The notes: generated by a model not told the origin, from the sequence alone. 64,000 nt of DNA from Asterias rubens (GCF_902459465.1 NC_047074.1:14198001-14262000); one strand, 5' to 3'; positions 6,600-63,727 are shown, numbered from the stretch's first letter. A program made the numbers and translations.

Positions 6600-6780
6600 T
6601 GTACAAGGGTCGTGGGTTCGAATCCCACCCGAGTAACATGCCTGTGTATTTTTTTCTTCACAGGACTCGGGAAAGTACCGAGTATACAGTGCAAACACAC
6701 ATCGGTGTAGGGTTAAAAACCAAAATTAATATTCTTTATCCCAGATGCAAATTTAACTTTAAATTTCTTTAGATACTGTA
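6600..6780 (+). mobile_element. tRNA-derived SINE (5' truncated)
   Basis: B-box ggttcgaatccc followed by a body shared with 11375-11485 (acaggactcgggaaagtac.gagta.acagtgc..acacatcggtgta). Confidence 0.65.
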
Positions 6781-7694
6781 CTCAAGAGCTATTTAGACTA
6801 TTTTTAACATGAGGTCAGAGACTTCTTTTGTCCCACTCACATGAGGACTCTATAGAATTAGATGTTGCAAACTACTTACCAACCAAATGGACCTACACTA
6901 CGGTATAAATGCAAATAAATAGTTAACGGTCTGACACTTCGACCCTAGCAGTCTCTTTCTCGAAGGCTAAATGACAACACAACAAACATGAACAAGTAAC
7001 TAAGTATGGAAAATTTGTACATCACAAGATTTAACTTGGTATTTCCCTTCCTCTTTAAGGACCAAATATCATGCCTGTTGTAGTCAGGAGACAAATGGAA
7101 TGACTGTAGAGTGTTTATAAATATGACTAATGGAGTAATCAATATGCAGATACAAAACACGTATAGAGACCAGTTTAAAATAATTATCTGTGTTTGATTA
7201 AACTGTTCATTCAACCCGTATGAACGATTTGGGTCAATATGGGTCGAGATTGAAACAGGTTATCCTCTTAAAGGCAGAGTAGACAGGGTTTTCCCCATAC
7301 ACAAGCCATTTTATCAGAATATATTGCGCAAATTTAGTGCTGATACAAGCAATTTTCAGTCGATACGCAAAAACAAAACTTCTTTTTTTACATTACTGAT
7401 TCGTTGACGCATTTCAGGCACTGATTAAAGGCAAACTATAGACGATGTGACCTCTGACGTCACCCGAAAACCATAACATGATTTGGGCGCATACCGCCGG
7501 GCAAAACCTTTGTGTTTTGGCAGCCAGCTAGAAAGTACACGCAATCTTAATATGTTTGGCTTGCGAAACATGACGTGTACAGTGTTTTGTCAACAAAGGG
7601 CGGTTTGAATGTAAACATAGGTCACATCGTCTATACCTTTGGTTTTTGGAGACGTTCGGTTGTTTGAATCCTGTATCAATGTACAATGTAGATC

Positions 7695-8114
7695 TATCAA
7701 TATAAACCACAAGGGAAACTAACTGGGTAAATTTTTGAAATGATTTTGGGGTTGAACAAAGAATTGACTAGAGTGGGATTCGAGCCAACGACCTCCGGAT
7801 TAACGTGCCGGCGCTCTACCAACTGAGCTATCTATCCCTATATTGGCGGTGTCCCTATTTTGCCAATATCTTTGTTCGGGGGTGCCAGTCAGAAGCCATA
7901 CAACCGTTAACTGCCGTGTAGCCAGGGATCACACCCAAATTACGATACAACCTGGGAAGCGGCAGCCAGGGGATCACCTTAAGGGGATGCGACTTTTTGT
8001 TTAAGATATCAATTTAAACCACAAGGGAAACTTTCAAAAATTTTCCCAGTCAGTTTCCCTTGTGGTTTATATTGATACCTGAAACAAAAAGTCGCTTGTT
8101 CAACCCCAAAATCA
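7695..8114 (-). mobile_element. Interspersed repeat with an internal tRNA(Asn)-like cassette and terminal direct repeats
   Basis: A-box TAGCTCAGTTGGTAGAGC and B-box-like GGCTCGAATCC on the minus strand at 7766-7836. Direct repeats tatcaat(a/t)taaaccacaagggaaact at 7695 and 8007. Degenerate copies near 4424, 4630, 21908, 29715, 43290, 47150 and 63860 (+). Confidence 0.75.
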
Positions 8115-10735
8115 ATAAAACTAACATGTGAAAATTTAATTTCAAAAGACTGTTAGCATTTTGTGATAATTATGTCCACATGGTTGTGTCCATGCGGGAA
8201 GAATAATATGTATCTGGAATACACAATCTGACAACTGTTTCATGCAAATAATGTTTCCCAGATTGTTATGTTTTTGAATCCCTCTCCCTAAAGCCACATT
8301 TCTTTGGGAGTCATTTTTCAAAATGTTACACATTATCAACATCTGTAGTGCTTCTTACCTACATGTAGTAATTTTATGGTAATTAATCTTTAAAGTAATT
8401 ACCAGGTATTTTTACTCTCCCTGTAATGTCTACTGGCTTGTCATTAAATCCTAGCAATTAATTAACTAAAATACACCTGTACAGATAGATGTTAATTAAC
8501 TCTTCACTTTCACTGCTCATGTGACACAGGTAGCGTGGTCACTAATTATTTGTTCCTAAATTGATAAGAGAGCTATTGGCGTAGATCACCAAGTTATTGG
8601 ATTTTCACATTAAATCCATTGGTAAAAGAAGGCTAATTTAAAGATCACCGAAACCACGATCAAATTAATATTGGAAACCTTACCTCAATCACTGTGTATA
8701 TTTGTGCTGCAAAATGTCAATATTTTTCTTGCTCCGTTTTTTTTCCCCTTTTCCCCCCTTTTATAAAATGTTCCCACTTCTAAAGGCCACAGTTTGTCTC
8801 CATAATCAGATCACACCTTTTTTTGTTTGGTGAGGGAAATATAGCTGGCAAATCTTTTAATGAGATTTATTTCAATTCGATACCCCAAGAAAACGGCCCC
8901 AAATTTGATCAATCACACGTGCACGTAGTATCTAATTGCTGAATTACCGTTTGTCTTCAACTCAAAGTGAGAGGACATGAAAACCAAGACGTAATTAAAC
9001 ATGGTCCGAGAAACACGGAGAGACCAACGACAGGAAAGGAGAAGGGGAAGAGGAGAAAAAAAAGGCGGTCATGAGATTACTTCGCTGGGAGGCCGAGCCC
9101 CTCTCGGCTAATCGGTGACCGGCTTTTACCCAGAGGCGGTATTTATAGAACTCTTTCTTGCTGATGGCGAATCTTACTAATGAAATTGTGGAGTAATTTG
9201 GCCTACGGGTTGCAATGGTAGAAGTACAGCAAAGTTAGCGTACAATTCAATAAGAAGCAGACGTGGCGTGGTGGAAGGACTGTGGTTCTGGGGGTGCTTG
9301 ATTGTTATCACAAATTTTTAAAAAATCCAGTAAAAATTAGTTCAATTTTGTTTTTATATAGGGAAGATGACGAGATTTTGGTGAAAACTGGTACACCTTC
9401 CGGGGCAATCTTAAGCAATAATGAAAACAAAATATGAGTGTCATGGTGTGGGATTTGTGAACTTCTCACCTAGGATTTCACCTATTGAATAAAATGGTAT
9501 CAACCATTGCCTATCTGTCGTCTGTAAGCTGTTACCATTTGGCACGCGCCATTAACCCCCACAGGGGTTGTATAGATACTTTTGCACCGTTGCCCTCCAG
9601 CGTCTTCGGTAGTCGGAATACAGAATCAAATTTCTTGAGACAACACTACATGTCAAAGGCTGATGACAATTTCCTGATTGTCTCAGTAGCATACAATCAT
9701 ACAAGAGTTATTTTAAGAATGCTACTTACATGCGTAGATGCTACTCTCTTTGTCAAGATTGGTTTCTAGGCATATTGAATTTTTTTTTTTTAAAGCAAAC
9801 AGTTTTTTCTTTGAGGAAATTGCATTTCTTGAAGATTGTGAATCAATTGACAGCATAGGGTTACAGACTTTTAAAAATGCATATTCATTAGATTGGGATG
9901 AACCAATCACAGCAAAGGAAAGTTTAGATTTGAATCATAGTATGAATATTTAAATTTTGTTATTTCACTTATTTTTGTACAGATGCTAGGTCCCTCAAGT
10001 CACACTTCAAATTTAATAAACAACATTTGAATGTTCAACATTCGTACAAGAATTAATCATATATCTCCAGGCACGATGATACATTTCTCTAACACTGAGT
10101 CACGTTCCTTGGTAACAAACAATCCATCATCAATGTTCCAAAGAAAAGTCTACCTCAATCGGAGAACTGCAGACATTAATTGCAGAGGTACAATTACAGA
10201 ATTTGTAAAAAAAAAATCATGAAGATCACGGATTTACATAAATGATGATGATAGGAGAAAACATCTCTTGAAATATTTCTGTCTGAAAATGATTGATTAG
10301 AAATAAATAAAACTATTTTCTTGTTTGGAGTTTATCGCTCAGTGAGAGTTTTATTTTTTACTTGTTTTTTTTAAGCCATGTCGTGCAAAATGTGTATCCA
10401 GTTTTTCACTATTTTCTCGTGACCCAGATGGCCGATCGATCTCAAACTTCTACAGGTTGGTCAGTTTATCTATTCTGTAATGTTCCTTTAAAAAGAAAAG
10501 TCTGTCTTAGTCTTAGAATTGCAGACATTGAATTGCAGACGTACAATTTCTTTAAGTATATATCGATCTTAAGTGTTTTCAACTTGAGCCCTTTCTTGTT
10601 TTGTTCGGAACAGATTGTTGTTCACTGTCTGCCTTTACAAATCTATTCCTATTGGGGTCAAAAAGTCATCTTTTTTCTCATTTTAAGAAAGGGTGACCCT
10701 GCAGGTGTTGAGCAAATTGTTCTTGGAATGAGGAT

Positions 10736-45240: not shown

Positions 45241-48200
45241 CTAGATGCGTCCCTTATCAGAAAGCTCGTTCATAAGTTTTGCGTTGTACGCAGCGTGTTT
45301 AGCCTGTAGTTCCTTGTCATTGACCGCACTCTTAGCCCAGTAAGTGAGTCCAAGGGCTGGACGCCATCTTTCCTTCGATCTGATCAAGAGAAAATATCAC
45401 ATAAAAGTTAGTTGTTTTGGGCTTTTTTTATGAGAAAATGCCTAACACCACAAGGCAGGATGGCCACTTGAAGGTGAGGGCGTACACTTCACTGATTTGG
45501 GCTGTTGCCCCAATAGTACAGTCACCAGGGGCACATTGCCACTTCCTCCCAGATGCTACAATTCCGGGGGTTTCAGACTCCATGCATATAAACAAATCCA
45601 TAGGTTCGGACACAATGTCAATAATCATTTCTTTCTCTTTTTGCTGACTGCTCTACTCGTTTCAAGAAAATCTGAAGACTCATGGAGGTTTCGAAAAACT
45701 CTTGAAATCAGGAAACATCCTGAGAAACCTTTAGAAGCTTTAAAGACACTGGACACTATTGGTAACTGTCAAAGACCAGTCTTCTCATTTGGAGTATCTC
45801 ATTGTACACATAAAACAACAAAACTGTGAAAATTTGAGCTCAATCAGTTGTCAAAGTTGCAAGATATTAATAAAAGAAGAAAACACCATTGTCACACCAG
45901 GGTAACACGAAGTTGTGTGCTTTCAGATGCTTGATTTAGAGACCTCAAATTCTAAATCTGAGGTCTCAAAATCAATTCGTGGAAAATTACTTCTTTCTCG
46001 AAAACTATGTCACTTCAGAGGGAGCCGTTTCTCACAATGTTTTATACTATCAACCTTTCCCCATTACTCGTAACCAAGTAAGTTTTTATGCTAATAATTA
46101 TTTTGAGTAATTACCAATAGTGTCTTAGATACTTTAATTCCAATTGCCTCAAGACTTACTTGTTTTCTCCGGCTCTATGAACCATGTAAGGATGGTGCCC
46201 AAGAAGGCTTCCTGTATATCAAAAGAAATCAGAAGTAACAAACTTTTCAGTTAAAATACTTTTTTGATACTTCAGAAAACATCAATAACCAGGCATAATT
46301 TGTGTTCTTCTTTTTAATGTTAACGCCCTAGAAAAGGCTAAAAAGCCACCCTTGGTATGGGGTTACAAGCAGAACAAATATTTCAAAGGAAAAGAACTTA
46401 GGGGAGTTAGGAATTAACGTTCCTCTTCAAACAGTCTAGATTGTAAGAAGGGGGAAACATTCACCAGGCAAGGAGTTCCAAAGAGATGCAGTATGTGGAA
46501 TAAAGCTATTGGAATGGCTCCTTGTTCTACATCTCAGCAAATGATATTTGGTCCTTGAAAAAATGGAAAAATCTTATAAAATGTAAGGGCTGACCTACAT
46601 ATACACAAGGTGTAGGCTCTAGTTTACTCTTCAGGCTTTATTTATAACAATTTCTAAGATTTTTCTGAGCTAAAACAAATCAGAAAACAGACAATTAGTA
46701 GGAGGGAAATCATGCCAGACTAACTGACCTTTCTTGACGGCCATTTCATCTTCGGTCTCTTCCATCCAGTCTTTATAGTTAACTAGAGCTTGACTGAAAC
46801 CCAGAGCATCCGTCTTACGATGTTCTAATTCTCCCTTCCGGTCAGACTGAGGGACATAGTACAGACAACCATTCTCAGCATCGGCGTCGTCCAATGCCAG
46901 CCAGAAGGTGATTCCTGGTGGGTGAACAAATAATATGAACAATATTGGGTTCTTGTGTAACCCTTAATCACCCCCCTTGGGGTCTATCCAAGTACTCGGT
47001 ACTTTTACTACAAGGTATGTGGAGCTTTTGTTTGAGTTTGCAGAGTTTTATTTCAGCTTGCTCAGGCAAAACATTCAAAATTTTGATCCAGAAAGGGTTA
47101 ATGTCTCTCAGCACAGCCCCAAAAAAAGGATATTTAACATGTTTAAAATATCAATATAAAAAACAAGGGAAACTGACTGGGTAAATTTGTAAAATATGTT
47201 TAAAATATAGTATTTTTGTGACATATTTGAATCTAATTTTTGTACTGTCTGGTCTACAGGAACACCGAAACACTTAGATTTTACTCTCATGATGATGGCA
47301 CAAACAAACATTCCTATGATGCAATAAAAGTCTTCAGAAACTCGAGCCATTTTCATACTATAACTCTTATCCCCGTGTAATACAGCAATTACCTCAGTGT
47401 AATTTCACACTGTGTCCCTATTCCACAGGGTTCCGGTTGCACAGTTTCAAGAAAACCCTTGGGTTTTACCGCTTACTCCTACTCCGGAGCAGGGGTGGCT
47501 CTTCCCCAAGGTATGCCCATTTAATGGGGCACACCAATGGTAAAGCTATCACTGGGTGCGCTCGATTAGCTTCCCTGGGTCGACCCCGGTCTGCCCCCGG
47601 TACGTTTGAATAGCTTTGACACCATTCCAGGGGCTCACCCCGGTCAGCCCCCAGTGCCCTGCTTGTGGAGTGGGTCACTTGGGGCTGGCCCGAGGTGCAT
47701 GACGTTACCACGTCGAGAGGGCGAGTGTGATTGCTCAATTAGCTCTGGTCAAGGGGTCACCAGAGTGAGCACCGCAAGGTTGACCCAGGGAAGCTTATCG
47801 AACGCACCCATAGTGTGAAAAGGCTGGTTGTAATTCCCTGGGTCAACCCTGGAGAATAGCGTAGTGTGAACAGGGTTTCAGAAATGTCTACCTACCTCTA
47901 TCATGCATGAAGTACTTTCCATCTTGGTGGGCAGGGGTGCACTTGGCGCCCGGTGGTTTGGAGAAATATTGGACATTATTAGGAATGCATTCCTCATTCA
48001 GAAGTAGGTCTGCAAGGCCATTGAAAGCTGGTGATTCACCGAGATCCTAAAAACAAAAAGTAACATTAACTTTAATAATAATAATAATAATAATATAGGA
48101 ATTTATATAGCGCCTTTAGCACAAATCAAAGTGCTGAACAATAAATAAAACAAGAACAAAGCAAGGAAAGAAAGAATTGTGAATTAATATTATCCATTAA

Positions 48201-49219
48201 CTTAAAATTTGAACATCTACATTGTGGTCAGGCAGCACAAGGTATCTTTGGCGGTTTTAAATAAAAAAACCTTCATAAAAAAAAAATCCAAAATTTTCAT
48301 CATCTTTGTCATTGCATGGTAAGTACTACTAAAATCAATTACCATAATACTAGAGCTTATTTAGTGAAAAGTACTGCAGCCGTTGATGGTTTAAACTATT
48401 TTGAGCAAAGGACTCCTTGGAAGATGGTTTTGATCATTTCTCATCCCAAAACATTTAAGAATGAGAACAAAATTAAGCATGACTTGTTTCTTAGATTTCT
48501 GTATGTTGGCCTCGTTTGCGAATGCTGTGACCAGAGACATGGTTGGTACCCACTATCAACTGGCTAAACAAGGATGGAATCAATCAACAAGACTGTAAAC
48601 ATATATTTTGAATGTGTTTTAAAAGCATACAATAAATAAAGTTGTTAACAATAAAAATAGAAACATTTAATAAACATTTAAAACAAAAAATTGTCAACAA
48701 AATTTAAAGTGAAAATGACCAAAGAAATACAAACAAACTAAAAAAAAAAAAAAAAAAAAAGACTTACTGACCTTGAAGAATTCGTCATGATCAAGCATTC
48801 TTTCAAGACGAATAATGGAGTCTTTCTCGCCTTTGGATTCATAGAAAGCCATCTTAGGTGGCAGGTCTGGGACGACATCATTCTCGTACCGTTTCAATTC
48901 ATTCTTGATGGCCTTTAACTCGTCCTCAGAAATGAAACAATCGGCCTGGGAGAGGGAAGTTTTAGAAAAATAAACAAAGTTAGAGTCCACTTCCTGTTAG
49001 TGTTATTTCATTCCTCATGTGACAAAAGGTCAATAAGAGGTCAACCAGCTATGTTTTATTTCTAACTTCTTGGGGTACAGCACTGGGCCCAATTTCAAAG
49101 AGCTCCTTGAGCAGAAAACATTTCAAAAAAAATAATAAAAATATGAATTTTAATATGTTTTCTTTTAATTGTTCAGCGCACAGGAGCATGTTTACATGGA
49201 TAGGCGCTATATAAATGTC

Positions 49220-49301
<82 letters not shown>

Positions 49302-50089
49302 TAAAAAAGATTCTGCCGAGTTTATCTTCAAAAAATGTTATTATTGTTTCATATTGAATGAAAAAATGGTGACGCGATATGGAAAACTTTCCTGTGTTTT
49401 ATTAAAATTTGAAAAACGTCACACCACGATAACCCTACCATGCCTACTCCTAGACTAGATTGTAGAACTATGAGGTTCGTTCCACTACCCTCTCCATGAC
49501 AGCGGAACGAACCTCATACTTTAAGGTGTAGGGTAACCCACCGAATTTACAGTCTACACTCCCTCCCGACTTATTCACTTAACCGTCCTAACAATTAATA
49601 AATACCACAACAAAAATACATTATTAGGAAAAGTTTCCGTATGGCGCCACCACTTTTTCATTCGATATGAAATAATATAGTATCTAATTTACCTCAATGA
49701 TATATCCCTTTTTGTAAAAATTAGTGAAAAAGTGGTGGCGCCATACGGAAAGTTATCCCATTATTATTAAATTTAAAATAGATTTGTGGAAAAATAATAC
49801 CTCAAGGAAAAAATTGACAAATTATGTCAAATTTTCTATCATGTAATAACTGCACCAAAACCATGTCTGTCAAAAAGAAAAATGAATGGTTCAAAATCAT
49901 GAATTATAAAAAAAAAAAAACTAATTTTCACGAAATAGATGCAGTACAAAAACGCCTTACCCGAATGTAACCCTTATCTTTGAAGAAGTCTTTCGTCTCC
50001 GTTTCATCCAATCTTTCCGAGAACCTTGGCCATGATGAAACAACTCCTTCTCCAGTTTTCTGTCGTTTTGATTTGGGAGGGGTGGACAT
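45241..50089 (-). CDS. Phytanoyl-CoA dioxygenase (PhyH) family Fe(II)/2-oxoglutarate dioxygenase, 276 aa
   Basis: Exons 50089-49961, 48945-48772, 48046-47896, 46914-46729, 46211-46160, 45379-45241; 831 nt, phases consistent. Motifs FFKDKGYI, SKPP..TPAHQDG (HxD), TFWLALDDADAENGCLYYVP, HHPYMVHRAGEN (distal His), and RPALGLTY (2OG-binding Arg region). Confidence 0.92.
45740..46137. mobile_element. TTAA-flanked MITE copy in a PhyH-gene intron
   Basis: Highly similar to 40058-40444; right TIR degenerate. Confidence 0.8.
47405..47875. mobile_element. GC-rich element with internal inverted repeats (probable non-autonomous DNA transposon)
   Basis: gggtgcgctcgattagcttccctgggtcgacc (~47553) versus ttgacccagggaagcttatcgaacgcaccc (~47780); ttcacact / agtgtgaa termini. 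Confidence 0.55.
49218..49301. repeat. (ATT)n microsatellite
   Basis: Seen directly; explains the poly-Tyr ORF 49169-49357. Confidence 0.95.
49625..49760. mobile_element. Short palindromic MITE
   Basis: ggaaaagtttccgtatggcgccaccactttttca / tgaaaaagtggtggcgccatacggaaagttatcc with attatta flanks. Confidence 0.7.
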
Positions 50090-51377: not shown

Positions 51378-54300
51378 TTAATGAGCTTTCTTGTGGAGCA
51401 CTTTCAACCACTTGAAGAACTTCACCAATGTTCCTTTCGATCCTGGTATCTCCCGTCCAATCTCAGGGGTTGGTTCGGGTGACGTCACGGGAATCAGTCC
51501 GCCGTTGTCGATCCGCACGCGGACGGTCGGTTGTGTTGGTTCAGGTGGCGTCACGGGAACTAATCCGCCATTATCAATTCTGACGCGGACGGTCGGTTTT
51601 GAGTGGCTGTGTTTTCTATGGTGGTGGTGGTGCTTCTTTGTTGGCCGGGAATCGACCACATCACCCCTGTGCTCTGATTGGCTATAGTGACGGCTGTTCT
51701 CCACATTGATTGGCCAAACGTCTGGAGTGACGTCACGTGCATGCCGGTCATGAGACTTGAGAAGGGAAACTCCAAGCAGAACCAGTTTCAGTTTGAGCTG
51801 TGTGTTTGTCTTCGTGTCGAACACTGTGTCTATAAAATGTCCTTTGTATACCTAATGCAAACGGGAAAAAAGGAACAGAAAGGTCATAATAATGAAGTCT
51901 CGGGCCAATGCCACCACGGAGAAACTCTATTCAGGCAACCAGTTCCAGGCTGAAGTCCCCTCGCTGATCAAAACGAGTATCTCGACCATTTTTGAATCTC
52001 GAAAAGATCGCATTTCAGGCAACTTTTTGACATCCAGATTTCAGTGGTGTCCGTTTGTGATTATTGAAGCCACATAGATGCGGTTGGTATCCGCTGAGTG
52101 TCAACTTGCTACACGTGAATGATTCGACTTTTTATATGAAAATATCGCGACAGGTTTTACTCAACAAGCACAATTTTCAGCTCAAATTTTCACTGACTCA
52201 ATATTAATTTACCATATCAGTATTACATTGACAAAAAACAATAATCTATGACCTTATCTTTAAGATACAAAACAGCAAAGATATGACCTTTATAAGAGCC
52301 ATAAACATTATCAAAATAGGGGGCCTTGTTGTTAATCAGTTGTATACTGACATTTGAGCAAAGGTTGCTGTGAGTTTTAGCCTTGCTTAAAAACACTAAA
52401 TCATTAGATTACATCCTTCGGGTGGAATCGGTCATCGAACTTGCGAGATAATAATGAAAGAAAAAAACTCACCCTTGTCACACGAAGTTGTGTGCGTTCA
52501 GATGGTTGATTTCGAGACCTCAAGTTCCAAATCTGAGGTCTCGAAATCAAATTCGTGGAAAATTACGTCTTTCTCGAAAACTATGGCACTTCAGAGGGAG
52601 CCGTTTCTCACAATGTTTTATACCATCAACCTTTCCCCATTACTCATCACCAAGTAAGGTTTTATGCTAATAATTATTTTGAGTAATTACCAATAGTGTC
52701 CACTGCCTTTAAAGCAAATAATTAAGTTTTGTGATTTACCTTCAAAATTTGAAGAGCTTTAAGAATAAGACTCAACTCTAGTTCTTTCAAGTCGACATCC
52801 AAAACAATAACTGTTTTCACGTCCTGAAATAAACAAAACATAGAGACATGCAGTTAATAAGTAGCTTTATTTAGTTGCTTATTGGACGACCTCCTGGGGT
52901 TCAGACCTCGTGGGGTTATTTGAAACGTTTAATAATCAGGGAGTATTGATGAAGAGGGGAGGGGGGAGGAGTGGGAGGAGGAGGAGGAGGGGGAAGGGAG
53001 GAAAACAACAACAGCAACAAAGAAGAGGAAGAAGCCTTTATGCATAGTGGGGTTTGAGGCGTTGCATGGTGAGGTATCAATTTAGTTTGCGGTAACACCA
53101 TGTGTGTGTCTACTCGCCAGGTAGGGTGTTGTTCTTTAGAGAACTGTCTTGCTTGATTCTACCGCGGAGTAGCGAATTCGGGAGACTTTTCAGTTCTGAA
53201 AAGAACTGTCCTTTATGCATTTTATTGTCTAATGTTATAATAACAATATATCAGCACTCGGCAACTTACCTGTAAAATGTGGATGGCTTTTAGGAGCAAA
53301 GTGAGTTTCAAATCGGCAACCAGGTGACCAGCAAAATGTGACGTCAATTTTTTGTCCTGTAATTAAAAAAATTATGTTTATTATTCAAATTCAGACTTTT
53401 AAATTTATTTAAACACTAGTAACAAACCCTTTTAAATAAAAAAAACGAAGAAGGGAACAGATAAATTGATTTTGTAAATGACAATTAAATTTCTTTAAAA
53501 CTTACTTTTAGTAGCAAGATGGCTTTGAGAATCAATTTGAATTTGAGTTCCTCCGTCATCTCACCGTGGCGAGGTAGCATTCTATGGACTTCATCTTTCT
53601 TTGAGGTCTAGAAATTTTAAATAACCAAAAAAGCAATAATTTTTTAGACAGAATATAAATGACACTTTTATAGAGTGTGTCAAAAACATTAAGCAAGTAA
53701 CTTTGTTAGCAGGTTTCCTCCGTCTTACGAGCTACAGTGATTAAAGGAACTGGACACTATAGGTAATTACTTTATATAATGTCATTGATAATATTGAAGT
53801 CTTATATATAGCGCACTCAAAATAACTGTTGCATAAAAAACTTACTTGGTAACGAGCAAAGGAGAGCTGTTGATTTTTGATAGTAAGTATAAAACATTGT
53901 GAGAAACGGCTCCCTCTGAAGTAACATAGTTTTTTTTAGAAATAGGTAAGTTCTCACTCACTTAATATTAAGTATCTGGAGTACACAAAGTAATGCAACA
54001 AGGTTTTTTTCTGTCATTATTCTCTTGCAAATTCGATGAACATTTGAGCGCAAGTGTTCACTGGTTTGTTATTTTATGCATATTTTGGGATACACTGAAG
54101 TGAGAATATTGGTCTTTGGCAATTACCGAACGAGCCTGTTCACTACATAAATGACACAGAATATTTCTTTTCGTACCTTCAATAACTCCAAGGCCTTCAA
54201 GATTAACTCTAACTTGAGATCATCACGCATCGAGTCGGGAAACAGACCGTCAACATCTATCATCTCATCTCCATCCGTAGGCAGCTGAAAAAAAAATGTA

Positions 54301-54880
54301 AAGTCTATGTTACCAAAACGAGGCTGGGAGGTAAATCGTCTGGGACTCTGTAATGAGTAATAGCAGCTTGGAAGTAATTCAGAAACGTAAATTTATTGAG
54401 CTACTAGTGACTCTTTACAATAGATGGTCTGATATCTTGGACAACAAAAAAATTGCAGATCACGACAAAGACAAAGGACAAATTCTCAATTAACCGCTCC
54501 AGATTTTCGGTAATATCTTAAAGACGGTACCTCTTGAACTGAAATATTTACAATATTGTAGATCCACTAAAATATTGTGAAAGATTAAATAAATCGAGCG
54601 GTCCCAAAACAAAATGTAGGCTTGCCTTTAAGCTGGCGTTTGTGCACGTGGCCTATTCAGGATAAATAAATAAAACAAGTCTACTTACAATAGCGACACT
54701 TTCTGAAGACATGATTTCATCTTCATAGTCAGGGATGCTTTCCGTGGCGTTCATCATAGCATCTTCTCCTCCATGGTCCTTCCCTCCGAAGATGTTGGTT
54801 AAGAACATCACGCATCCTCCAGTTGCGATGACAACCACCAAGACCACAACCACGACCAAAAGAAGTATCTTACAACTCAT
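51378..54880 (-). CDS. Orphan secreted protein, 319 aa, with four exon-encoded Leu/Lys helices, a His tract, a 21-aa repeat and a cationic amphipathic C-terminus
   Basis: Exons 54880-54689, 54284-54177, 53607-53506, 52823-52740, 51851-51378; all introns phase 0 with canonical sites; 960 nt. Hydrophobic N-terminus MSCKILLLVVVVVLVVVIATGG. TATATAAA upstream. The internal repeat differs mostly at synonymous sites. Confidence 0.85.
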
Positions 54881-55056
54881 TATTAAGAGAAACTTATTCT
54901 TTGTATTATACACAAATTTATCTAAAACTAAAAAGTCTTACACAACTTCTGGAACTTTTTTTTAGTGCACCGAGGTTCTCGAAATAATGCTGTTGCTTGG
55001 AGTAAATTTTTCTGGAGCTGGAAAAATTGTGTTTGACTCTCTCTAGCAAACCTCAG

Positions 55057-55064
55057 TTTATATA
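55057..55064 (-). promoter_or_regulatory. TATA box of the minus-strand orphan secreted gene
   Basis: TATATAAA on the minus strand ~180 nt upstream of the ATG at 54880. Confidence 0.65.
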
Positions 55065-57842
55065 GTATTTACCTTGCTAGGTATTTTAGGTTGGGTTTTA
55101 TGAGTTTTTAGTTAATTTTGGGATAAGTTTGTTGTGAGACGGCCCACGCACGGCACTCCTTGACCGTGATGGTTTACATCCATGCTACCGTTTCCTGGGT
55201 CGATGAAACGGTATTCCGAGCAGCGCTGCATGGTGCCTGGGTTTGCTTGACGCACCGGTGTTATTTTAGACGACTCAGCGGACCCTGGTATGTAATTCCT
55301 GGGTTGGTTTTTGCAATTCATGCTTTTGTATCGTCTTCAGTTGTTAAAAAAAACAAAAAAAACAAACAAAAACATCGTGTGGCCATGGACACTCCATTTA
55401 TCTTTGATCTGTTTATATTATTATTAAAAAAAGATAATGACACACATTTGGTAACAACACAGACAATTACCATTTGGGGAGTGGACGGGACAAACCCAAA
55501 TCTTCAACAAATGGGCCCAATCTACTGAAAACACTCTTATTAAAGGTTTTTAGACTGACATTCACTCTCAAATCGAATGAAATTCATGGACAAATCATCT
55601 ACAGGTTGTCAACAGTAGCTACTTTCACTGACTCGACTCCAGTGATTTGCAGACTTAAAAGAAAGAATTGTTATAGATAATAATTATTAGGCCCAACACA
55701 AAGTACATTGGGCTTACAGATAAAGTATTTGTAATTCAAGGGCGGTTTTCCACAAAGTCCATCTTTCTATCCCATGTAAACTGTGTGCAAATTGGTTAAC
55801 TTTTATATTATTTCCAATATTTTGCACGTGCACCCTTCTTTACATTCTTCTCGTTTGTAACTGGCCCAGACCAGTTATAGCGGCCATTGCAATGAAGTTG
55901 TCATTGTGGCGCAATAACAATCCCGTCCAAAATGATTGGGCCACCTGACAATAATAATTATACTCCCCACAGATGTTGTTTTCATCTTATAGTTCTTTAT
56001 TAATGATTCCTTTCCCATTTTATGGTTTGATTAACAGGGATTTAATGAGTCACAGTGGTTTGGTTCCCTGTTAAGAATCTTGACCATTTTAGAATGAGTT
56101 TGTCTTGTCATCATGGACCAATTTCGTGGAGCTGCTCACCAGCCAGACTATCATATCACGTACAATTTGTAGCTGGTATCCTGCTAGTTTCTGCTTGCCA
56201 GACAATTGTTAAGCGATATTTTTCGCTTAAGCGACTTCATGAAATTTGGCCCTGATTCAAACAATGTTCTAGCGAGACCCAATTTCACAAAGCTGTTGTT
56301 AACAGAAAATACCGCTTAGCAAACTTCTCTGCTAATCCAGAAAGTAGTGGGCGCCCCAATGTAGTTTTGCCTGGTAAACTGTTTCTTTTAAGCAACACTT
56401 TTATGTGCCTACAGACTTTGTGAAGTGGGGCCTTGCAGGGTTGTAGACAAACCTAATTGTTGTAGTTGGGACAGAAACTCAACTTGGGCGGTGAATATAA
56501 GTCACTGACTCATATCAAAACACACTATAGACAATGATTGTAGAAATGGGAAAGTTCGGATATGCGTTGTAGACAGGAAATGTTGATTTTAGTCATTCCT
56601 ATTCATGGTGTATGTTCCTTAGAGGATGACTTCATTAGGATCTATCGGTTGGATATTATATTATTGGATTTCCAAATCAATTATTAGATATCGATCGGGC
56701 ATGCCAAATGACGATAGAAATGACCAGGTTGGGCTTGAAACCCGACCAATTTGACTTCACAATTATTGAAATGGGGTTTTTGCGCTTGAATGGTATACCT
56801 TTGGTAATTACTACAAAACAATAATGGCCAGAACAACTGACTTGGTACGAAGCTATTGACAATGTATAACATTTTGAGAAAGAATTGCGATTTTCAGATG
56901 GAGGATTTTAAAAGCATTTCAATCTGAGAAACATCAGATGTTGACAAACTCCATTTTACGGATTACTCTTCCTGCGTGGACATCACCGCCACGACTCTGC
57001 GGTGACGTCTTAAAACGCTACCGCCACATTTAAAATTAATTTTTTGCAGTTTAATTTAAGTATATATTTACTTCGTTTATTTATGATTGAAATGATCGAC
57101 CAATTAAAAAAAAATGAAGGCACGCCTATACTTAGTCTTTAAGGAACTATGGACCAAGCTACCATGCAAGGTTCAAATGATAGGCCTATAACTGAAACCA
57201 CCGGTGCCAAACGATAAGTTTTCGGGGGGGGGGGCACAAGAAGGTGCACCGTATTTTTCGTGGGGTGGGGGGGGGGAGACTTCTACAACCTACCAATTAA
57301 ACGGTTGTTTCCGTTCACTTATTTGTTATACATGATATAATATGACCCGAGTGTCTAAACCGATTGGAGCTGAACATATGGGGTGTGGTATTAGACGTAT
57401 ACGCCCTAAGCCAATTCCCCATCATCGATGATCAGAGGTGATAGGGAATATGATTTGTTCATAATTTCCAACAGTGACAACTGCAAAAGACTACTGTTGC
57501 AGTAGCTACAGATATTGAATACAATCAGTTTAAACACAAATTGGCACAAAACACACCACTTTCAAAACATCAGTTTCGGTGAACCCCGGAAAAGTACAAA
57601 ATGGACTCGGTATACAGAAGGGATGTTCGCCTCGTAGACAAGGAACCGACACAGGAAATCTGTCACACTTTTAAAACAATAGAATCTTTACCTGTCAGTT
57701 AAAATGGCATACGTGCAGTAACATAAGTAGGTCGGACAACTCCTCCTTCAAAAAAATTTGTGTCCAGAACTAAAACTAAAACCATTAATCTAACGTCCAG
57801 GACCCGTTTCCTCATCGGAAGTGCGCACCCTCCCGAGGATTG

Positions 57843-57850
57843 TATATAAA
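57843..57850 (+). promoter_or_regulatory. TATA box of the plus-strand orphan secreted gene
   Basis: TATATAAA, followed ~25 nt later by an Inr-like TCAGATT; ATG at 57979. Confidence 0.7.
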
Positions 57851-57978
57851 GAGGAACCAATCAACATATTCATCAGATTTGTTTTCTGGTGGGTCGTTCT
57901 TGATTTCCGAACCAAAAAAAATTAGCTCTTCAACAGTTTGACTGATTTGGAGCTTGTCCGAGAGACTGGGTTTCAACC

Positions 57979-59622
57979 ATGAATCACGGGTCATTCTTAG
58001 CGGTGTTTCTGCTCCTTGCGTCGGTATCTTACCTCGCCAATGGGGACCGCTGGAACCAGGAGTCACAACAGCCACTCACAGACTGGCAGGTTAGCCTACT
58101 TGCCCAAGATCTGGTAAGTTTTATTTTGAAATATAAACAAAATAAATTCGTCTCTTCTGGAAAGTATTCGGAGCAAGTTTTCTTTTTACGGGACACGTTG
58201 GGTAATTTTTATAAGACCGGTATTCTTGGTGTATTTTTTGTTTTGTTTCATTGGTCATCTAAATTTGCAAGAGAATAATGCAAGAAAAAAACCACCCTTG
58301 TTGCACAAAAATCGTGCAAAGTTACCCCTTTCTCAGCAATTTTACTTCAGAGGGAGCCGTTTCTCACAATGTTTTATATTATCAACGGCTCCCCGTTGCT
58401 CATTATCAAGTAAGTTAATTATGCTAATACTTTGAGCAATTACCAAACGTGTTCTGTGCCTTAATTTAGATTTGTGTCAGGATTTAGACGTTTTTGTGGG
58501 ATGGGGGTTTGCTGAGTGGTTTCCTCCCTGCCATTCGCTTTGTGCGACCCTGGTTCGATTGCCAGACTGAAACTTTGCATGTGGATTGGGGTTTTAGTCT
58601 GTTGGCCTAACTAGTTGTTTTCCTCCCACGTCTAAAACCAAAATTTCATAAACTTGTCTTCTTAACAAAAGTTGGTGTGATGTTTCCATTAGTATACTTT
58701 TCCTTCATATTCAGCTTCGAATCGATTTTTTTATTCACTTGGAGGGTGGTGTTTGGGTGGGGGGGGGGGGGGGTGATGGGCCAGAGTGAATGAACGATCG
58801 GATCCAGTAAATAACTGCCACCTCTCGAAATCTTAAAAACATTATTATACCCGTAGAAACTCTGGCTTAATTACTCGGGTGGGATTCCAACCCAAGACCT
58901 TTGCCATTATAGAGCTGATGTCTTACCAACATAGACTACTGTCATTGCCCAGTAGCTATAGATGCAGTTCGAATCCTATATGTTAGCAGCAGGTATTGCA
59001 TCATTTCAAAAGATTTTAAATTTGCATCGTGATAAAGAATGGGTTAGTTTGACCATAGAGGTAGAAATACCATGGTTATACTGTTACACCGATGTGTATA
59101 AGCACTACATACTAAGTACTTTTACAAGTTCTGTGGACAAAAATCACACAGACATATTTACTCGTGTGGGTGGAGTTTCGCTGCCCATGTCTCATGTTTG
59201 TAAATATTCTGTTTTCCATGTAGCCGGACGAGCTACGTACACTCTATGAGCAGATAATTGATCCCAACGTGGATGAGATCAACAAAGAAAACTACATCTG
59301 GCGAAGCTTTGAGCTCCTCAAATACAGGAAGTACAGACGTTATAGTTGGTTCTACTACTGGCTTCTCGACATCAGTGGGTCCGACCAGCAGCAACTCGGC
59401 AGGCAAACTCCAAAAGGACAAGGGGGACGCACACCACCGAACATCGGGGGATACACTCCAGGCGGACGTACTCCGCCAAACATGGGGGGACACACTCCAG
59501 GGGGACGCACACCGCCGAATCTCGGGGGACGCACGCCCGGTGGACGCACTCCAAAACGCGGCGGACAGAGACCACGACAGAGACAAAGACATGGAAAAGG
59601 TCACGGACGCAATATTGTATAG
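57979..59622 (+). CDS. Orphan secreted Gly/Arg/Thr/Pro-repeat protein, ~177 aa (2 exons)
   Basis: Exon 1 57979-58113 (signal peptide MNHGSFLAVFLLLASVSYLANG; donor CTG|gtaagt, alternative CAG|gttagc at 58089). Exon 2 59224-59622 (acceptor ttttccatgtag); only the phase-0 frame is open from this acceptor. Repeat codons vary at wobble positions (CGC/CGT, ACA/ACT/ACG, CCA/CCG/CCC, AAC/AAT). TATATAAA at 57843, AATAAA at 59752. Confidence 0.82.
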
Positions 59623-62059
59623 ATGAACAGTCGTAAACGGTTATCCATTAAAACAAATTTGAATACCATGCCCAATGTGTGGCAGTGGGTACCCCCTCCA
59701 ACCCACGCAATTTATGCTTAGATGAACAGTCGTAAACTGTTATCCATTTAAAATAAAGTTATAAGCTAGAGGACTTCCTGCCCCGAAATGTTCCCATAAA
59801 ACACTCTTGTCCTCAATGAAGACAAACTAGGGGTTCACCTAACCCTATATAGGACTCTTCCTATGTACTGTAGTGGGGACCCTGCCTCATGTTGAGCACT
59901 ACATGTAGATTCAGCAATACCAAAAGATTAATGAATCATAAGGGTAAACTAAAAACCTGAATAAAACTGTATAAGACAAGCTTTCACTTCACAAAAAATA
60001 AAACAAGTTCTTTCTGGAAGCAAGAGGACAAGCTACATATAAAAACACAAATAAATTTTAGAATCCTCGCATTTGCTAAACTTTAGAAACGCCTCTGTCA
60101 TTTCACACTTTGCCAGTGATCAACATTTGCACACCTGAAGTATTAATAAGCATAAACAGATTCAGAAATTAAATTCAACTGTAGTGGAAGAAAATGTTTA
60201 GTTTTTATTTTAATTTTTAATAAAACAAAGAGAACAAACAAGAAGAAACAGTGATTTGTGTGTGTATTTCGTTTATTTAAACTCACAGCTTTTAATATAA
60301 TGTGAATATGACTGACAGGTACAATGATACTTTTTTATCTGATCACTTAACAAAACAGGTGGGTCAGAACAGAAATAATGACACCCACCCCCAATCTGCC
60401 CTGCCCCATCCAACCCACACCCGCCCCGCCCCATCCCATCCCCAGATAGTGAATATTGATAACATTAAGGTAAAACCAAGCAAAGCAAAAACAGTTCAGA
60501 AGTGTCGCATCAACATCTTATTGGCCAATATTTAATATTTTGAAGCCATTTTAAACTATCTATGTTAAAACTTGGCAGTTGTTAAGTGTTCTTTATTTAC
60601 TTTCATTTCAACTTTTTTTTTTAGTATGGGAAACTGTTAAAAAATGTCTACAAAACGTCCCAACTTTGTGATAAATAGTCTAGGTAACTTGAAAAGTAAT
60701 CCAATTGCAGCCCAAACTGGGCTAAACATGGATAAACATGGATCTGGGTTAAACTGGGATATGAAGTGAATTATGAAGCAGGTATGACAGGAGAATCTGT
60801 TCTCCCCCCCCCCTCAAATGGCAAACTGTGTACAAACTTCTTCTGATAGCGCCCTCTTTTGATTCATCCTCCTTCAGCCAATGTTAATTCCCATATGGGG
60901 GACAGAAACTCCAGGGTCGGGTTTCCCTTTGACACCGCTAGTCAGATAGATTAGGTGACAAAAAGTAGAAAATAAAAATTTCAACAGCCAAAGTTAAGTA
61001 ACGACCATATAGTTAGCATCGGTAACATTGGCCAAGCATATTCTGACTCGCAGAAGGAGAATAATTTGTTCTCATTTGAAAATGTGTACATGAAAATTGA
61101 CTCCGAAATGGAATAAAAAGAAGGAAGTACACATCTTTAAATTCAAACAGGAAATTGGTTGACTATAAAACATCCAATTAGACAGAATCGGTCTTTGGAA
61201 AGCTGACATCAGTATAATATGGAGTATTTATAGTCATCAATGCTGTGTTTAATCTATTGATTATAATAATGGGCGATCAAACGATTATCCTCAATTTACA
61301 TCAAACTTCATCAATTCTATTCTTGTTAAGATAATTGCAAGCCCAACTTATCCCCCCCCTCTGTCTTCTACAGAAATTCTATTAATAAGAAAAAATGAAG
61401 ACGTCAAATGTCTTACGCCTTATCCTTCCATTCGCAGATGAAGCACACAAATACATGCAGAAGCACAAATTCTTGTAATAAGCCTATTCAGAGTTCCAGC
61501 TGCGCATGTCTGTTACTGCTGACAACGCAATTTGTTGCTCTCCCGTGACCTTTTGATAATACCAGCGAGTATTGTCAAAAGGTCACTCGAGAGCAAAAAA
61601 TTGCATAATCAGCAGTAACAGACATGCACAGCTGGAACTCCAAATAGGCTTATGCTTAGCAGAACAGGTTACCAGCCAAACCACCATGTAAAGTATACTG
61701 TATGTGACTGGTTCCCTGCTCATGGTTTTGCGAAGCAGTTTCCTGATACTAGTCCCAAGGCCCAATTTCATAAACCCTGCAAGCATACAAATATATGCTT
61801 AGATAAGCTAAACTCTGTCTTAACAGAAACAGGTTACCAGCCAACGTTCCATGAATGTTAAAATTAGGGGGGCACTGGTGCCCCACAATTGTTTTGCTAA
61901 GCAAAGAACTGTGCTGAGCAGCATTTTCTGCTTAAGCAGCTCTTTGAAATTGCTCAGCTTGTTTCTGGATCATCATCCGATGTAGAAAATGTCACTGTAA
62001 TATACGTCATCCCCCTATTCCCCCGCCAATCTCTGCCACGATCTTGAGAAGTTATCGTC

Positions 62060-63727
62060 TTAAACTTTGGAGGGTGGAGTGTCCTCCTCGATGTATTCAA
62101 ACGGCTCAGGAGCTTCTGGTTCTTCTTCTTCCTCTTCCACCTTGGGTCCACCAGCTGAAAAAGGCAACAAAAGAAAGACAATGATAAGTTAGCAAAATGC
62201 AAGTACAATTTATTAAATGATAGTACATGGCATTTATATGGCGCTTTATACAAAAAAAACAGCGCCACACAATCAACAACAGTATGAAATACGATGGAAA
62301 AAAAAAAAAAAAAAAGCTTGGAAATAGGTGAGCGTAATTTTTGTTGTGCTTAACTACTTATTGTGTTTAAGCAGCACAATGAACTTGGGCCCAGAGCCCA
62401 CTTTCATAGAGCTGCTTGACAGCTGATTTTGTGCTTACTGTGTGATATCCATTTCATAGCGTGCTAAGCGTCAGCACACGAAAAGGTGTGCTAACCTTCT
62501 GGTGCTTACTGCACGAAAATAAATAATGTCACAACGTAAATTTGTGGTGAATGCACAAGATGGCCTTGCTAATCTGTCAAATATGATTACAATTTTTAGC
62601 AATTTTTTATGCTACAGTAAGCACGAAAATTTGCTTAACATGAAGCATCGCTATGCCATTGGGCCCAGTCCTCACTTCACCCCTGTTCTATTTATGTCTG
62701 AAAGCTTTTAAGTGATCTAGAAATTAATGAACTGTAAAATTAAAAGTTTTGTGACTGAAGAATCCTTAATGATGTTTATGTCCGCTATGAGGACATCGTT
62801 GTTGATTGCCTCGGGCCTTGAGATTTCTCCGTCCAGTTTAAGAAACAAGCTCTTTCTTAATACTGACCTGGGACATTAAGAACGATTTCTTCTGGTTCAT
62901 CTTTAGCCGTGTCTTTCATCATAATTATTCCTCCATCAGACAGCTGTAATAAAGGAGATGAGAAAGACAAATGTACATGACAGATTGGATAGACACCAAC
63001 AGAAACATAACAGGAAACCAACAAAAACACCAACAGAAATACAATGACAGTTTGATGTTTTTTTCTTTAGCTCTTTTTAAAACATCTATCAATATTGTGT
63101 AATTATCATACAGTGGTTTATTTGGCTTTCACGATCAAAATTTAGGCTGTCACTCTTTTGTTTTTATCTATAAAGGCAACCTACACTGTGGACAGTTAAC
63201 TAAATTTCGTTCAGAAGGAAGAACAAACTTAAAATCTACATTCTATATTTACAAAGGATAACTGGAATAAGGTTTTTGTGTAGAATGAGGACCCTTGAAC
63301 AAAATTGCATCAACAGTTTCAGAGTAAATAAGACACAACAGTCCATTTGTGGCAACCATTTTGAGGACATTATTAGTACCCGTGTTCAGGGCACATTTGA
63401 GAATGATTTTAAATAAACCATAAACAATACCCCCAAAACGTAACTGACCTGTTTGACTGGGACGTATCTGGACTTATCGACCGTTGTTAAGACTTTGAGC
63501 TGAGCAACCATAACTCTCGCTGGAGAGTTCAATATCTCAAACGATGGCTCAATTTTCTTCTCTTTCTTCTTAGGCTCCACCTCCGGTTCCTCTTCCATCT
63601 TCTCATCTTTCTTATCCTTGGTGTCTTTTCCTGCATCTTTGGAATCCTTCTTTTCTTTTTCCTTCTTGTCTTCTTTTTCTTTCTTCTCTTTGTCGGCAAC
63701 CTTTTCTTCCTCTTTGATTGGTTCATC
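62060..63727 (-). CDS. PSMD1: 26S proteasome non-ATPase regulatory subunit 1 (RPN2), last three coding exons; 5' part lies beyond the window
   Basis: Exons 63727-63449, 62943-62868, 62154-62060 with consistent phases. EPSFEILNSPARVMVAQLKVLT, LSDGGIIMMKDT and GPKVEEEEEEPEAPEPFEYIEED match the recalled human PSMD1 C-terminus ([22 protein letters not shown] ... EPEPPEPFEYIDD). Confidence 0.95.
62395..62666. mobile_element. MITE, GGCCCAATTTCA family, abutting another copy across a CAG
   Basis: ...cttgggcc-CAG-agcccactttcatagagctgc ... ccattgggcc-CAG. Confidence 0.65.

What the first reader, a model, noticed from the sequence alone, without database searches (positions are those of the whole stretch)
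51378..59622. Head-to-head pair of TATA-driven orphan secreted genes: candidate co-regulated secretory or defence module
Two unrelated-looking orphans are divergently transcribed with the same TATATAAA boxes (55057-55064 minus, 57843-57850 plus) about 2.8 kb apart. Both have the same logic: signal peptide, acidic N-terminal region, short internal repeats under synonymous-biased change, and a cationic His-containing C-terminus. They sit between PhyH and PSMD1, just upstream of an ectoenzyme (the cyclase). Inference: a lineage-specific two-component secreted system with shared enhancers, for example an antimicrobial or adhesive cocktail from one gland-cell type.
Basis: inference. Interest (0 to 1): 0.7.

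Follow-up and report, generated by a model that had tools for sequence, protein, structure and literature searches.

The report
Conserved head-to-head sea-star gene pair
Two real but uncharacterised genes found only in sea stars have sat head-to-head beside PSMD1 in three species, yet the available transcript data do not show them being switched on together, so a joint "secretory module" is unproven.

Summary
The window is Asterias rubens. Gene A (minus strand, 6 phase-0 exons, 348 aa) and gene B (plus strand, 2 exons, 177 aa) match RefSeq LOC117298779 and LOC117298579 at 100%. Both TATATAAA boxes are where stated. B transcripts begin 36-49 nt after its box and are spliced as modelled.

The genes are not orphans. 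Both have orthologues in Patiria miniata and Acanthaster planci, and the A<->B head-to-head order next to PSMD1 is kept in all three. A also has paralogues.

Neither protein matches a Pfam family or a specific known fold. A has a 29-residue uncharged N-terminal helix, more likely a signal anchor than a cleaved signal peptide. It continues with an acidic stalk, a confident TPR-like five-helix-repeat core with one repeat per exon, a conserved RHAR site and a His-rich cationic tail. B has a signal peptide, a confident four-helix aromatic core and a disordered Gly/Arg/Thr/Pro/His tail.

Co-regulation is not supported. B is present in all four transcriptomes laid, while A exon 1 has zero reads in three and a low-depth contig in one. 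A's promoter has its own conserved motifs; the only conserved motif shared with B is TATAAA. An antimicrobial or adhesive role is untested.

This is an ordinary, modestly interesting pair of lineage-restricted genes.

The parts
51378..51851 (-). Gene A exon 6 (with stop): fifth LK helix, RHAR site (aa 227-230), His tract, two 22-aa PTVRVRIDNGGL repeats, cationic C-terminal helix
52740..52823 (-). Gene A exon 5, one LK helix repeat, phase 0
53270..53356 (-). Gene A exon 4, one LK helix repeat, phase 0
53506..53607 (-). Gene A exon 3, one LK helix repeat, phase 0
54177..54284 (-). Gene A exon 2, acidic stretch plus first LK helix repeat, phase 0
54689..54880 (-). Gene A exon 1: ATG, 29-residue uncharged helix (probable signal anchor), N44 glycosylation sequon, acidic region
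   Evidence: one low-depth transcript contig in X8
55057..55064 (-). TATATAAA box of gene A, 184 nt before the ATG; aligns with TATAAATA in Patiria and Acanthaster
55152..55162 (-). CAAGGAGTGCC, promoter motif of A conserved in three sea-star species
55191..55201 (-). AACCCAGGAAA (GGAA core), promoter motif of A conserved in three species
54881..57978 (.). Intergenic region between the two ATGs (3098 bp, against 1969 and 1922 bp in Patiria and Acanthaster); holds interspersed repeats; no Rfam or tRNA match
57843..57850 (+). TATATAAA box of gene B
57886..57892 (+). Observed 5' ends of B transcripts (contigs start at 57886 and 57889; read starts cluster at 57892)
57979..58113 (+). Gene B exon 1: signal peptide and short acidic N-terminus
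59224..59622 (+). Gene B exon 2: four-helix aromatic core, GGRTPPNxGGxTP repeats, cationic His-containing end, stop

Best explanation
These are two separate protein-coding genes of the secretory pathway, restricted to sea stars. They have stayed neighbours in divergent orientation inside a small conserved block (A, B, PSMD1) since the Forcipulatida/Valvatida split. Each has its own TATA core promoter, and they are not demonstrably co-regulated.

Gene A (LOC117298779) most likely encodes a type II membrane-anchored glycoprotein, or one with an unusually long signal peptide. Its outside part is an acidic stalk followed by a TPR-like alpha-solenoid of five LKxxLxLKA helices, built by duplication of phase-0 exons. 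A conserved RHAR site for a furin-type convertase would release a His-rich, cationic C-terminal fragment that ends in an amphipathic helix.

Gene B (LOC117298579) encodes a small secreted protein. It has a cleavable signal peptide, a folded aromatic-rich four-helix domain and a disordered polycationic Gly/Arg/Thr/Pro/His repeat tail. I infer that this tail sticks to polyanions such as matrix, mucus or microbial surfaces.

Shown: gene structure, transcription and splicing of B, orthology, synteny, lack of known domains, and decoupled transcript presence. Inferred: membrane topology, cleavage and the molecular roles.
For: The gene models equal RefSeq proteins.

Orthologues and synteny: Patiria has B(-) at 7044-8031, A(+) from 10001 and PSMD1 at 1-5240 of L001. 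Acanthaster has A(-) at 4394-8192, B(+) from 10001 and PSMD1 from 12724 of L016. B orthology rests on tblastn E = 5e-21 and profile E = 1e-53 to 1e-85. The A-side flank shows no similarity between species, while the PSMD1 side does.

Taxonomic range: a family profile of A against 1.8 billion representatives gives 14 hits at E <= 0.001; the full-length ones carry RefSeq sea-star names, and the short unnamed fragments have the same family motifs.

Structures: A has a helix at 3-31, a core at 75-230 with pLDDT 84-93 and a helix at 331-347. B has a core at 33-97 with pLDDT about 90 and a disordered tail. Fold searches return only generic TPR-like or helix-bundle matches.

Topology clues: A orthologues have a 24-29-residue uncharged run, against 20-22 plus an SSQA/SAQA motif in the paralogues. 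There is one sequon, N44, and RHAR is conserved.

Expression: spliced B contigs are present in X8 and X19, and B depth is about 55 in X10 and 6-20 in X11. A exon 1 has depth 0 in X10, X11 and X19, and 2.9 in X8. The index shows B without A in X14-X16.

Promoters: A has eight conserved 8-mers (0.2 expected) and B has none. The only shared conserved 6-mer is TATAAA.
Against: Conserved divergent adjacency over a long time, with a break of synteny right beside A, is what a functionally linked pair would also show. Five index-listed runs (X1, X2, X4, X6, X9), plus X8 when laid, hold both transcripts, so co-expression in some tissues is possible. The tissues of the runs are coded and unknown. The raw-read runs belong to a sister species a few percent divergent, and only A exons 1-2 were inside the laid stretch. 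No experiment or dedicated predictor was available for topology or cleavage.
Confidence: 0.6

Rival explanations
1. One reading: A and B are a co-regulated two-component secreted system, for example an antimicrobial or adhesive cocktail. They would be driven by shared enhancers in the intergenic region and made by one gland-cell type.
For: The head-to-head pair is conserved in three species of two orders while the outer flank of A is not. Both genes are asteroid-restricted, TATA-associated and enter the secretory pathway. Both end in cationic His-containing tails. Runs X1, X2, X4, X6 and X9 hold both transcripts in the index, and X8 holds both when laid.
Against: B is present without detectable A in X10, X11 and X19 and in X14-X16. 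The B:A ratio is about 5:1 in X8 and, with about 55x on B and no read on A exon 1, far higher in X10. No conserved non-coding block is shared between Asterias and the valvatids other than A's own proximal promoter, and no conserved motif is shared by the two promoters except TATAAA. The intergenic length is not constrained: 3.1 kb with repeats against 1.9 kb. A's paralogues are not paired with a B-like gene.
Confidence: 0.2
2. B is a highly diverged, truncated member of the A family. It would have been born from an inverted (head-to-head) duplication like the one seen for the Patiria paralogues, which would explain the shared 'logic' of the two proteins.
For: The Patiria paralogues LOC119726473 and LOC119726341 are themselves head-to-head. 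Both genes have a phase-0 first exon encoding the hydrophobic leader plus an acidic stretch. The second exons place ...ELLK at nearly the same offset, and hhalign picks that stretch with 38% identity over 24 columns.
Against: hhalign gives a probability of 0.4% and E = 0.16. An HMM built from 23 LK repeats does not score B above shuffled B, with 115-316 of 1000 shuffles doing as well. B's core is aromatic-rich and lacks the LKxxLxLKA pattern.
Confidence: 0.07
3. One or both proteins are precursors of small bioactive peptides: neuropeptide-like, or cationic host-defence peptides released from the repeats and tails.
For: The layout of signal sequence, acidic pro-region and cationic C-terminus resembles AMP precursors. 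RHAR is conserved in A orthologues. The peptide repeats are under purifying selection. There is a weak Atlas lead to apidaecin-type precursors for B, with a score of 0.76 that is below any trust level.
Against: The repeats are not flanked by dibasic sites. Asterias A has no cleavage site just before the C-terminal helix, and B has a single KR. The amphipathicity of the Asterias tail is not above shuffles: muH 0.41, matched by 228 of 2000 shuffles. There is no Pfam hit, including Apidaecin. Both proteins contain sizeable, confidently folded domains that are conserved better than the tails.
Confidence: 0.12

Closest known systems
Divergent (head-to-head) gene pairs with bidirectional promoters
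   Same: Opposite orientation, adjacent 5' ends, and an arrangement conserved across species.
   Different: The TATA boxes are 2.8 kb apart and the ATGs about 1.9 kb apart in the other species, far above the usual limit of under 1 kb. Each gene has its own TATA core promoter. Classical bidirectional promoters are typically TATA-less and CpG-rich (my own knowledge). Transcript presence is decoupled.
TPR-like alpha-solenoid repeat proteins
   Same: The predicted core of A (aa 75-230) is a stack of helix pairs. Its best structural neighbours are TPR or helical-repeat proteins: VIA Z 8-9.8, with TPR clusters in the Atlas rows.
   Different: No TPR Pfam model matches. The Z scores are below the level that is meaningful for helical repeats. 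The repeat motif LKxxLxLKA with one repeat per exon is its own, and the domain is predicted to be luminal or extracellular.
Precursors of linear cationic or Gly/His/Pro/Arg-rich antimicrobial peptides (cecropin- or magainin-type; apidaecin, shepherin, armadillidin)
   Same: Leader, then an anionic region, then a cationic C-terminus. The composition is rich in Gly/Arg/His/Pro, with short tandem repeats.
   Different: No sequence homology. There are no processing sites around the repeats, and large folded domains are present. No activity data exist. The comparison rests on composition and on my own recollection of those families.
A-family paralogues in Patiria miniata (LOC119726473, LOC119726341) and on Asterias contig C2
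   Same: The same five LK helices, acidic N-terminus and KxFKWxKxxPxxxHKK tail, with E = 1e-90 to 1e-131 against the family profile.
   Different: The paralogues have an ordinary cleavable signal peptide, lack RHAR and the PTVRVRIDNGGL repeats, and one carries a Thr/Ser/Glu/Ala-rich mucin-like insert. They are paired with each other, not with a B-like gene.

Membership tests
Bidirectional-promoter gene pair | Transcription starts of the two genes less than about 1 kb apart on opposite strands | tested here: not met
   The TATA boxes are 2779 bp apart. The ATG-to-ATG distance is 3098 bp in Asterias, 1969 bp in Patiria and 1922 bp in Acanthaster.
Bidirectional-promoter gene pair | Correlated expression of the two genes | tested here: not met
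   B is covered in X10, X11, X8 and X19. A exon 1 has depth 0 in X10, X11 and X19 and 2.9 in X8. X14-X16 hold B words and none of A. The tissues are unknown, so the test is coarse.
Conserved microsynteny pair | Same neighbours and relative orientation in distant relatives | tested here: met
   Patiria L001 and Acanthaster L016 both show A and B head-to-head, with PSMD1 beyond B.
TPR repeat proteins (Pfam TPR clan) | Sequence match to a TPR profile | tested here: not met
   Pfam scan at E up to 1 returned only a sub-threshold CbiN hit on the N-terminal helix.
TPR repeat proteins (Pfam TPR clan) | Helix-turn-helix solenoid fold | tested here: inconclusive
   The best VIA Z is 9.8-8 against helical-repeat or TPR chains. 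Foldseek E values are all 0.01 or higher. Atlas rows are mostly TPR with TM 0.22-0.34 by query.
Linear cationic alpha-helical AMP precursor | Signal sequence followed by an anionic pro-region | tested here: met
   A residues 33-85 have 16 D/E against 2 K/R. B residues 23-46 have 4 against 1.
Linear cationic alpha-helical AMP precursor | Processing site immediately before the cationic peptide | tested here: not met
   Asterias A has ...PGSKGTLVKFF... with no dibasic site there. RHAR lies about 100 residues upstream. Patiria has KKKK at that place.
Linear cationic alpha-helical AMP precursor | Strongly amphipathic cationic helix | tested here: inconclusive
   Net charge is +6. muH is 0.41 in Asterias, matched by 228 of 2000 shuffles, and 0.60-0.65 in the Patiria proteins, matched by 3-19 of 2000.
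Linear cationic alpha-helical AMP precursor | Antimicrobial activity | not testable with these tools
   Needs synthetic peptide assays.
Apidaecin-type Pro/Arg-rich multipeptide precursor (PF00807) | Profile match and repeats separated by processing spacers | tested here: not met
   No Pfam hit. The Atlas feature score of 0.76 is a lead only. B's repeats are contiguous, with a single KR.
Neuropeptide precursor | Repeated peptides flanked by mono- or dibasic sites, often with a C-terminal Gly for amidation | tested here: not met
   Neither B's GGRTPPN repeats nor A's PTVRVRIDNGGL repeats are flanked by basic pairs.
EF-hand | 12-residue loop with D/N/S at positions 1, 3 and 5, a hydrophobic residue at 8 and Glu at 12 | tested here: not met
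   In B's DPNVDEINKENY (aa 58-69), position 8 is Asn and position 12 is Tyr, and Acanthaster has Ser at position 1. There is no Pfam hit (read by eye).

The most novel reading that the evidence does not exclude
A and B form a sea-star-specific two-part extracellular system kept together by selection. A would be a membrane-anchored TPR-like scaffold whose groove binds the proline-rich cationic repeat tail of secreted B. Alternatively, both would be processed into cationic host-defence or adhesive components in the subset of cells where both are on. The conserved A-B-PSMD1 block, with a synteny break just outside A, would then reflect functional linkage.
Probability: 0.12. Interest if true: 0.6.

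Novelty: new member of a known kind. Interest (0 to 1): 0.3.

Why it matters
The result turns two 'uncharacterized LOC' entries into two defined protein families restricted to sea stars. It gives clean gene models, orthologue sets, predicted domain maps and a conserved promoter module for A. If the pair proved functionally linked, it would be a compact example of lineage-specific secreted proteins held together in a divergent pair, with possible relevance to sea-star mucus, adhesion or immunity. As it stands, the pair is one of many taxon-restricted neighbour pairs, and the available transcript data argue against tight co-regulation.

Tried and rejected
- **Pfam:** no family for either protein.
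- **Fold searches:** Foldseek against PDB and AFDB clusters, VIA-align wide and the Atlas shape search gave only generic helical matches for both models. The PDB sequence profile search for B gave only chance-level hits.
- **ESM Atlas feature search:** nothing for A or for B's core. The sub-threshold apidaecin-like lead for whole B was not pursued as evidence.
- **Homology between A and B:** hhalign probability 0.4%. An HMM of 23 LK repeats did not beat shuffles on B. Rejected.
- **Complex prediction:** A 72-232 with B 23-100 scored 0.00 with no verdict, which is neither for nor against binding. A's core against B's tail was not tested.
- **Literature:** full-text searches for the six LOC names found nothing. 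Two accession numbers were my own guesses, not tool output, and should be ignored. The supplements of the Patiria single-nucleus atlas do not mention the Patiria genes, and the ovary atlas has no supplements held.
- **Non-coding conservation:** blastn of the intergenic regions between Asterias and the valvatids gave no hit, while Patiria against Acanthaster shares three blocks.
- **RNA genes:** Rfam and tRNA scans of 51-60 kb found nothing.
- **The look-up of encoding contigs** for the Acanthaster A isoform X2 found no record. The locus was reached through B instead.
Full report
**What is there**

The window has no N. It is Asterias rubens, contig C14:14198001-14262000 of the assembly.

On the minus strand I assembled a six-exon gene, A. 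Its exons are 54880-54689, 54284-54177, 53607-53506, 53356-53270, 52823-52740 and 51851-51378. Every exon is a multiple of three and all introns are AG/GT. The 348-aa product is 100% identical over its full length to RefSeq 'uncharacterized protein LOC117298779'.

On the plus strand, gene B has two exons, 57979-58113 and 59224-59622, and gives 177 aa. It is 100% identical to LOC117298579.

TATATAAA sits at 55057-55064 (-) and 57843-57850 (+), 184 and 136 nt upstream of the ATGs. The octamer occurs 15 times in the window on both strands. Two copies in the right orientation within about 200 nt of two start codons are therefore unlikely to be chance.

Flanking exons match PhyH (46670-46942, -) and the RPN2/PSMD1 C-terminal domain (63386-63598, -). 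The factual part of the finding is confirmed.

**Transcription**

- Two contig runs of the same species hold spliced B mRNA. X8 has an 883-nt contig covering 57886-58112 joined to 59223-59750. X19 has a 633-nt contig covering 57889-58112 joined to 59223-59631. This confirms the intron and shows that these runs are RNA.
- The 5' ends at 57886 and 57889, and a cluster of read starts at 57892 in X10, lie 36-49 nt after the TATA box. That fits TATA-directed initiation, given that contigs and random-primed reads under-represent the extreme 5' end.
- In the raw-read runs X10 and X11, from a sister species a few percent divergent, B exons have depth of about 55 and about 6-20. A exon 1 has depth 0 in both.
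- X19 has nothing on A exon 1, and X8 has one contig of depth 2.9.
- In the word index, X14-X16 hold 0.16-0.32 of B's words and 0.00 of A's. X1, X2, X4, X6 and X9 hold both.

B is therefore more widely or more highly expressed than A, and the B:A ratio differs widely between samples, from about 5:1 in X8 to no A reads at all in X10. The tissues are coded, so this is a coarse test. It nevertheless speaks against obligatory co-expression.

**Not orphans, and linked in relatives**

A has orthologues in Acanthaster planci (LOC110980990, 47% identity) and Patiria miniata (LOC119724072, 45%). It has paralogues in Patiria (LOC119726473 and LOC119726341) and on Asterias contig C2.

A family profile searched against 1.8 billion representative proteins returned 14 hits. 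The full-length ones are named sea-star proteins; the rest are short fragments, without names, carrying the family's motifs.

B looked like an orphan in a single-sequence search. The gene beside the Patiria A orthologue turned out to be its orthologue, with tblastn E = 5e-21 and 59% identity over the core. A two-sequence profile then recovered Patiria LOC119724071 and Acanthaster LOC110980972. B is single-copy in Asterias.

- In Patiria (L001) the order is PSMD1, B(-), A(+).
- In Acanthaster (L016) the order is A(-), B(+), PSMD1(-).
- Both are the same head-to-head arrangement as in Asterias.
- The flank outside A shows no similarity among the species, whereas the PSMD1 flank does.

However, a three-gene conserved block does not by itself prove functional linkage.

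The Patiria paralogues of A are head-to-head with each other, not with a B-like gene.

**Promoters**

A three-species alignment of A's upstream region puts the TATA boxes in the same columns. It also reveals two conserved blocks, AACCCAGGAAA (55191-55201, -) and CAAGGAGTGCC (55152-55162, -). This gives eight conserved 8-mers against 0.2 expected.

B's upstream region has TATA-like boxes at about -131 to -136 in all three species. It has no conserved 8-mer. The only conserved 6-mer common to both promoters is TATAAA.

The Asterias intergenic region is 3.1 kb, against 1.9 kb in the others. It contains segments with repeat-level read depth. No blastn similarity to the valvatid intergenic regions was found.

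There is thus no sequence evidence for shared enhancers. The spacing is outside the usual definition of a bidirectional promoter.

**The proteins**

A has these parts:

- An N-terminal run of 29 uncharged residues, conserved among orthologues and predicted as one helix (aa 3-31). The paralogues instead have 20-22 such residues followed by SSQA or SAQA, as expected of a cleaved signal peptide. I therefore read A as a probable type II signal anchor. This is an inference from the flank charges and from the single conserved sequon at N44 just after the helix.
- An acidic region, with 16 D/E against 2 K/R.
- A confidently predicted helical-repeat core at aa 75-230, with pLDDT 84-93. It holds five LKxxLxLKA helices. 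The first four each end exactly at an exon end, which points to growth by exon duplication.
- A conserved RHAR site at aa 227-230 (RRHAR in the valvatids). By my own knowledge this fits the furin-type RxxR motif.
- A low-confidence C-terminal third with an H5 tract and two 22-residue repeats that differ by 8 synonymous and 3 non-synonymous codons.
- A cationic tail of +6 plus His, conserved across the whole family. Its amphipathicity is clear in the Patiria proteins but not above shuffles in Asterias.

B has these parts:

- A typical signal peptide.
- A four-helix aromatic-rich core at aa 33-97, with pLDDT about 90. This is the best-conserved part.
- A disordered tail of GGRTPPNxGGxTP repeats, with synonymous to non-synonymous ratios of 5:2, 4:2 and 7:2. 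It ends in a His-containing basic stretch.

Against the sister species, the listed coding differences are 7 synonymous and 8 non-synonymous. That list is incomplete, so I draw no rate of evolution from it.

**Comparison with what is known**

No Pfam family matches either protein. Foldseek and VIA-align give only generic TPR-like solenoid neighbours for A and helix-bundle neighbours for B. These are below the levels the tools call meaningful for helical proteins.

A and B are not detectably related to each other. The features of AMP precursors, apidaecin-type precursors, neuropeptide precursors and EF-hands are mostly not met; the details are in the membership table. A complex prediction of the two folded cores gave no verdict, and I do not count it either way.

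**Verdict**

The pair is real and correctly described, and it is conserved as a pair. It consists of two lineage-restricted genes (Asteroidea), not orphans. The co-regulated 'module' interpretation is not backed by the promoter comparison or by the transcript data I could reach.

I put about 0.6 on independent neighbours in a conserved block and about 0.2 on a co-regulated module. The remainder goes to peptide-precursor or duplication-origin readings, which overlap with the others.

Function remains inferred from composition and predicted architecture only. Interest is modest.

The earlier first-reader notes on the same stretch (s1-150210, s1-150462, s1-150571) describe the same exon-repeat, RHAR/His-tract and GGRTPP features. 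I re-derived these from the sequence.

Noticed in passing
window 58350-58377 (also 37900, 40324, 46018, 52594 on +, 53889 on -): An interspersed repeat with the core GAGGGAGCCGTTTCTCACAATGTTTTAT has six copies in the window, three of them in introns of A and B. It attracts thousands of raw reads, and summed contig depth exceeds 1.3 million in the RNA runs, so the element family is very abundantly transcribed somewhere in the genome.
   Followed up: partly
window 58825-59013 (intron of B): A second repeat has very high read depth (85-376 in raw reads; 37,000-63,000 summed contig depth). By eye it looks like a tRNA-derived SINE, but ARAGORN and Rfam call nothing there.
   Followed up: partly
L002 2580-6611 (-) and 10001-14182 (+), Patiria miniata: Two A-family paralogues (LOC119726341, 391 aa with a Thr/Ser/Glu/Ala-rich mucin-like insert, and LOC119726473, 291 aa) lie head-to-head about 3.4 kb apart, next to a wnt gene.
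   Followed up: partly
G000:C2:23089575-23094594 (+), loci L009/L010/L015: Asterias has one A-family paralogue on another contig. No B-like sequence was found in the 30 kb fetched around it.
   Followed up: partly
L016 10001-10114, Acanthaster planci: The RefSeq model of LOC110980972 starts 38 codons upstream of the Met that aligns with the signal peptides of the Asterias and Patiria proteins. The annotated N-terminal extension is probably a mis-called start.
   Followed up: no
P0003 (Patiria LOC119724072), residues about 165-175: An 11-residue hydrophobic insertion (YSLIFFLFNFQ) sits exactly at an exon border and is absent from all relatives. It is probably a mis-annotated splice donor.
   Followed up: no
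window 57936: The sister species in runs X10 and X11 has an 8-nt deletion in B's 5' UTR. Its B protein starts MKHGSF rather than MNHGSF, matching the fragment P0007.
   Followed up: no
window 49169-49357: A long TAT/TAC-type microsatellite reads as a poly-Tyr ORF between the PhyH gene and gene A.
   Followed up: no
run X3 (marine metatranscriptome): An environmental metatranscriptome holds 15% of the sampled words of A's last exon. This may be sea-star larval or shed RNA.
   Followed up: no
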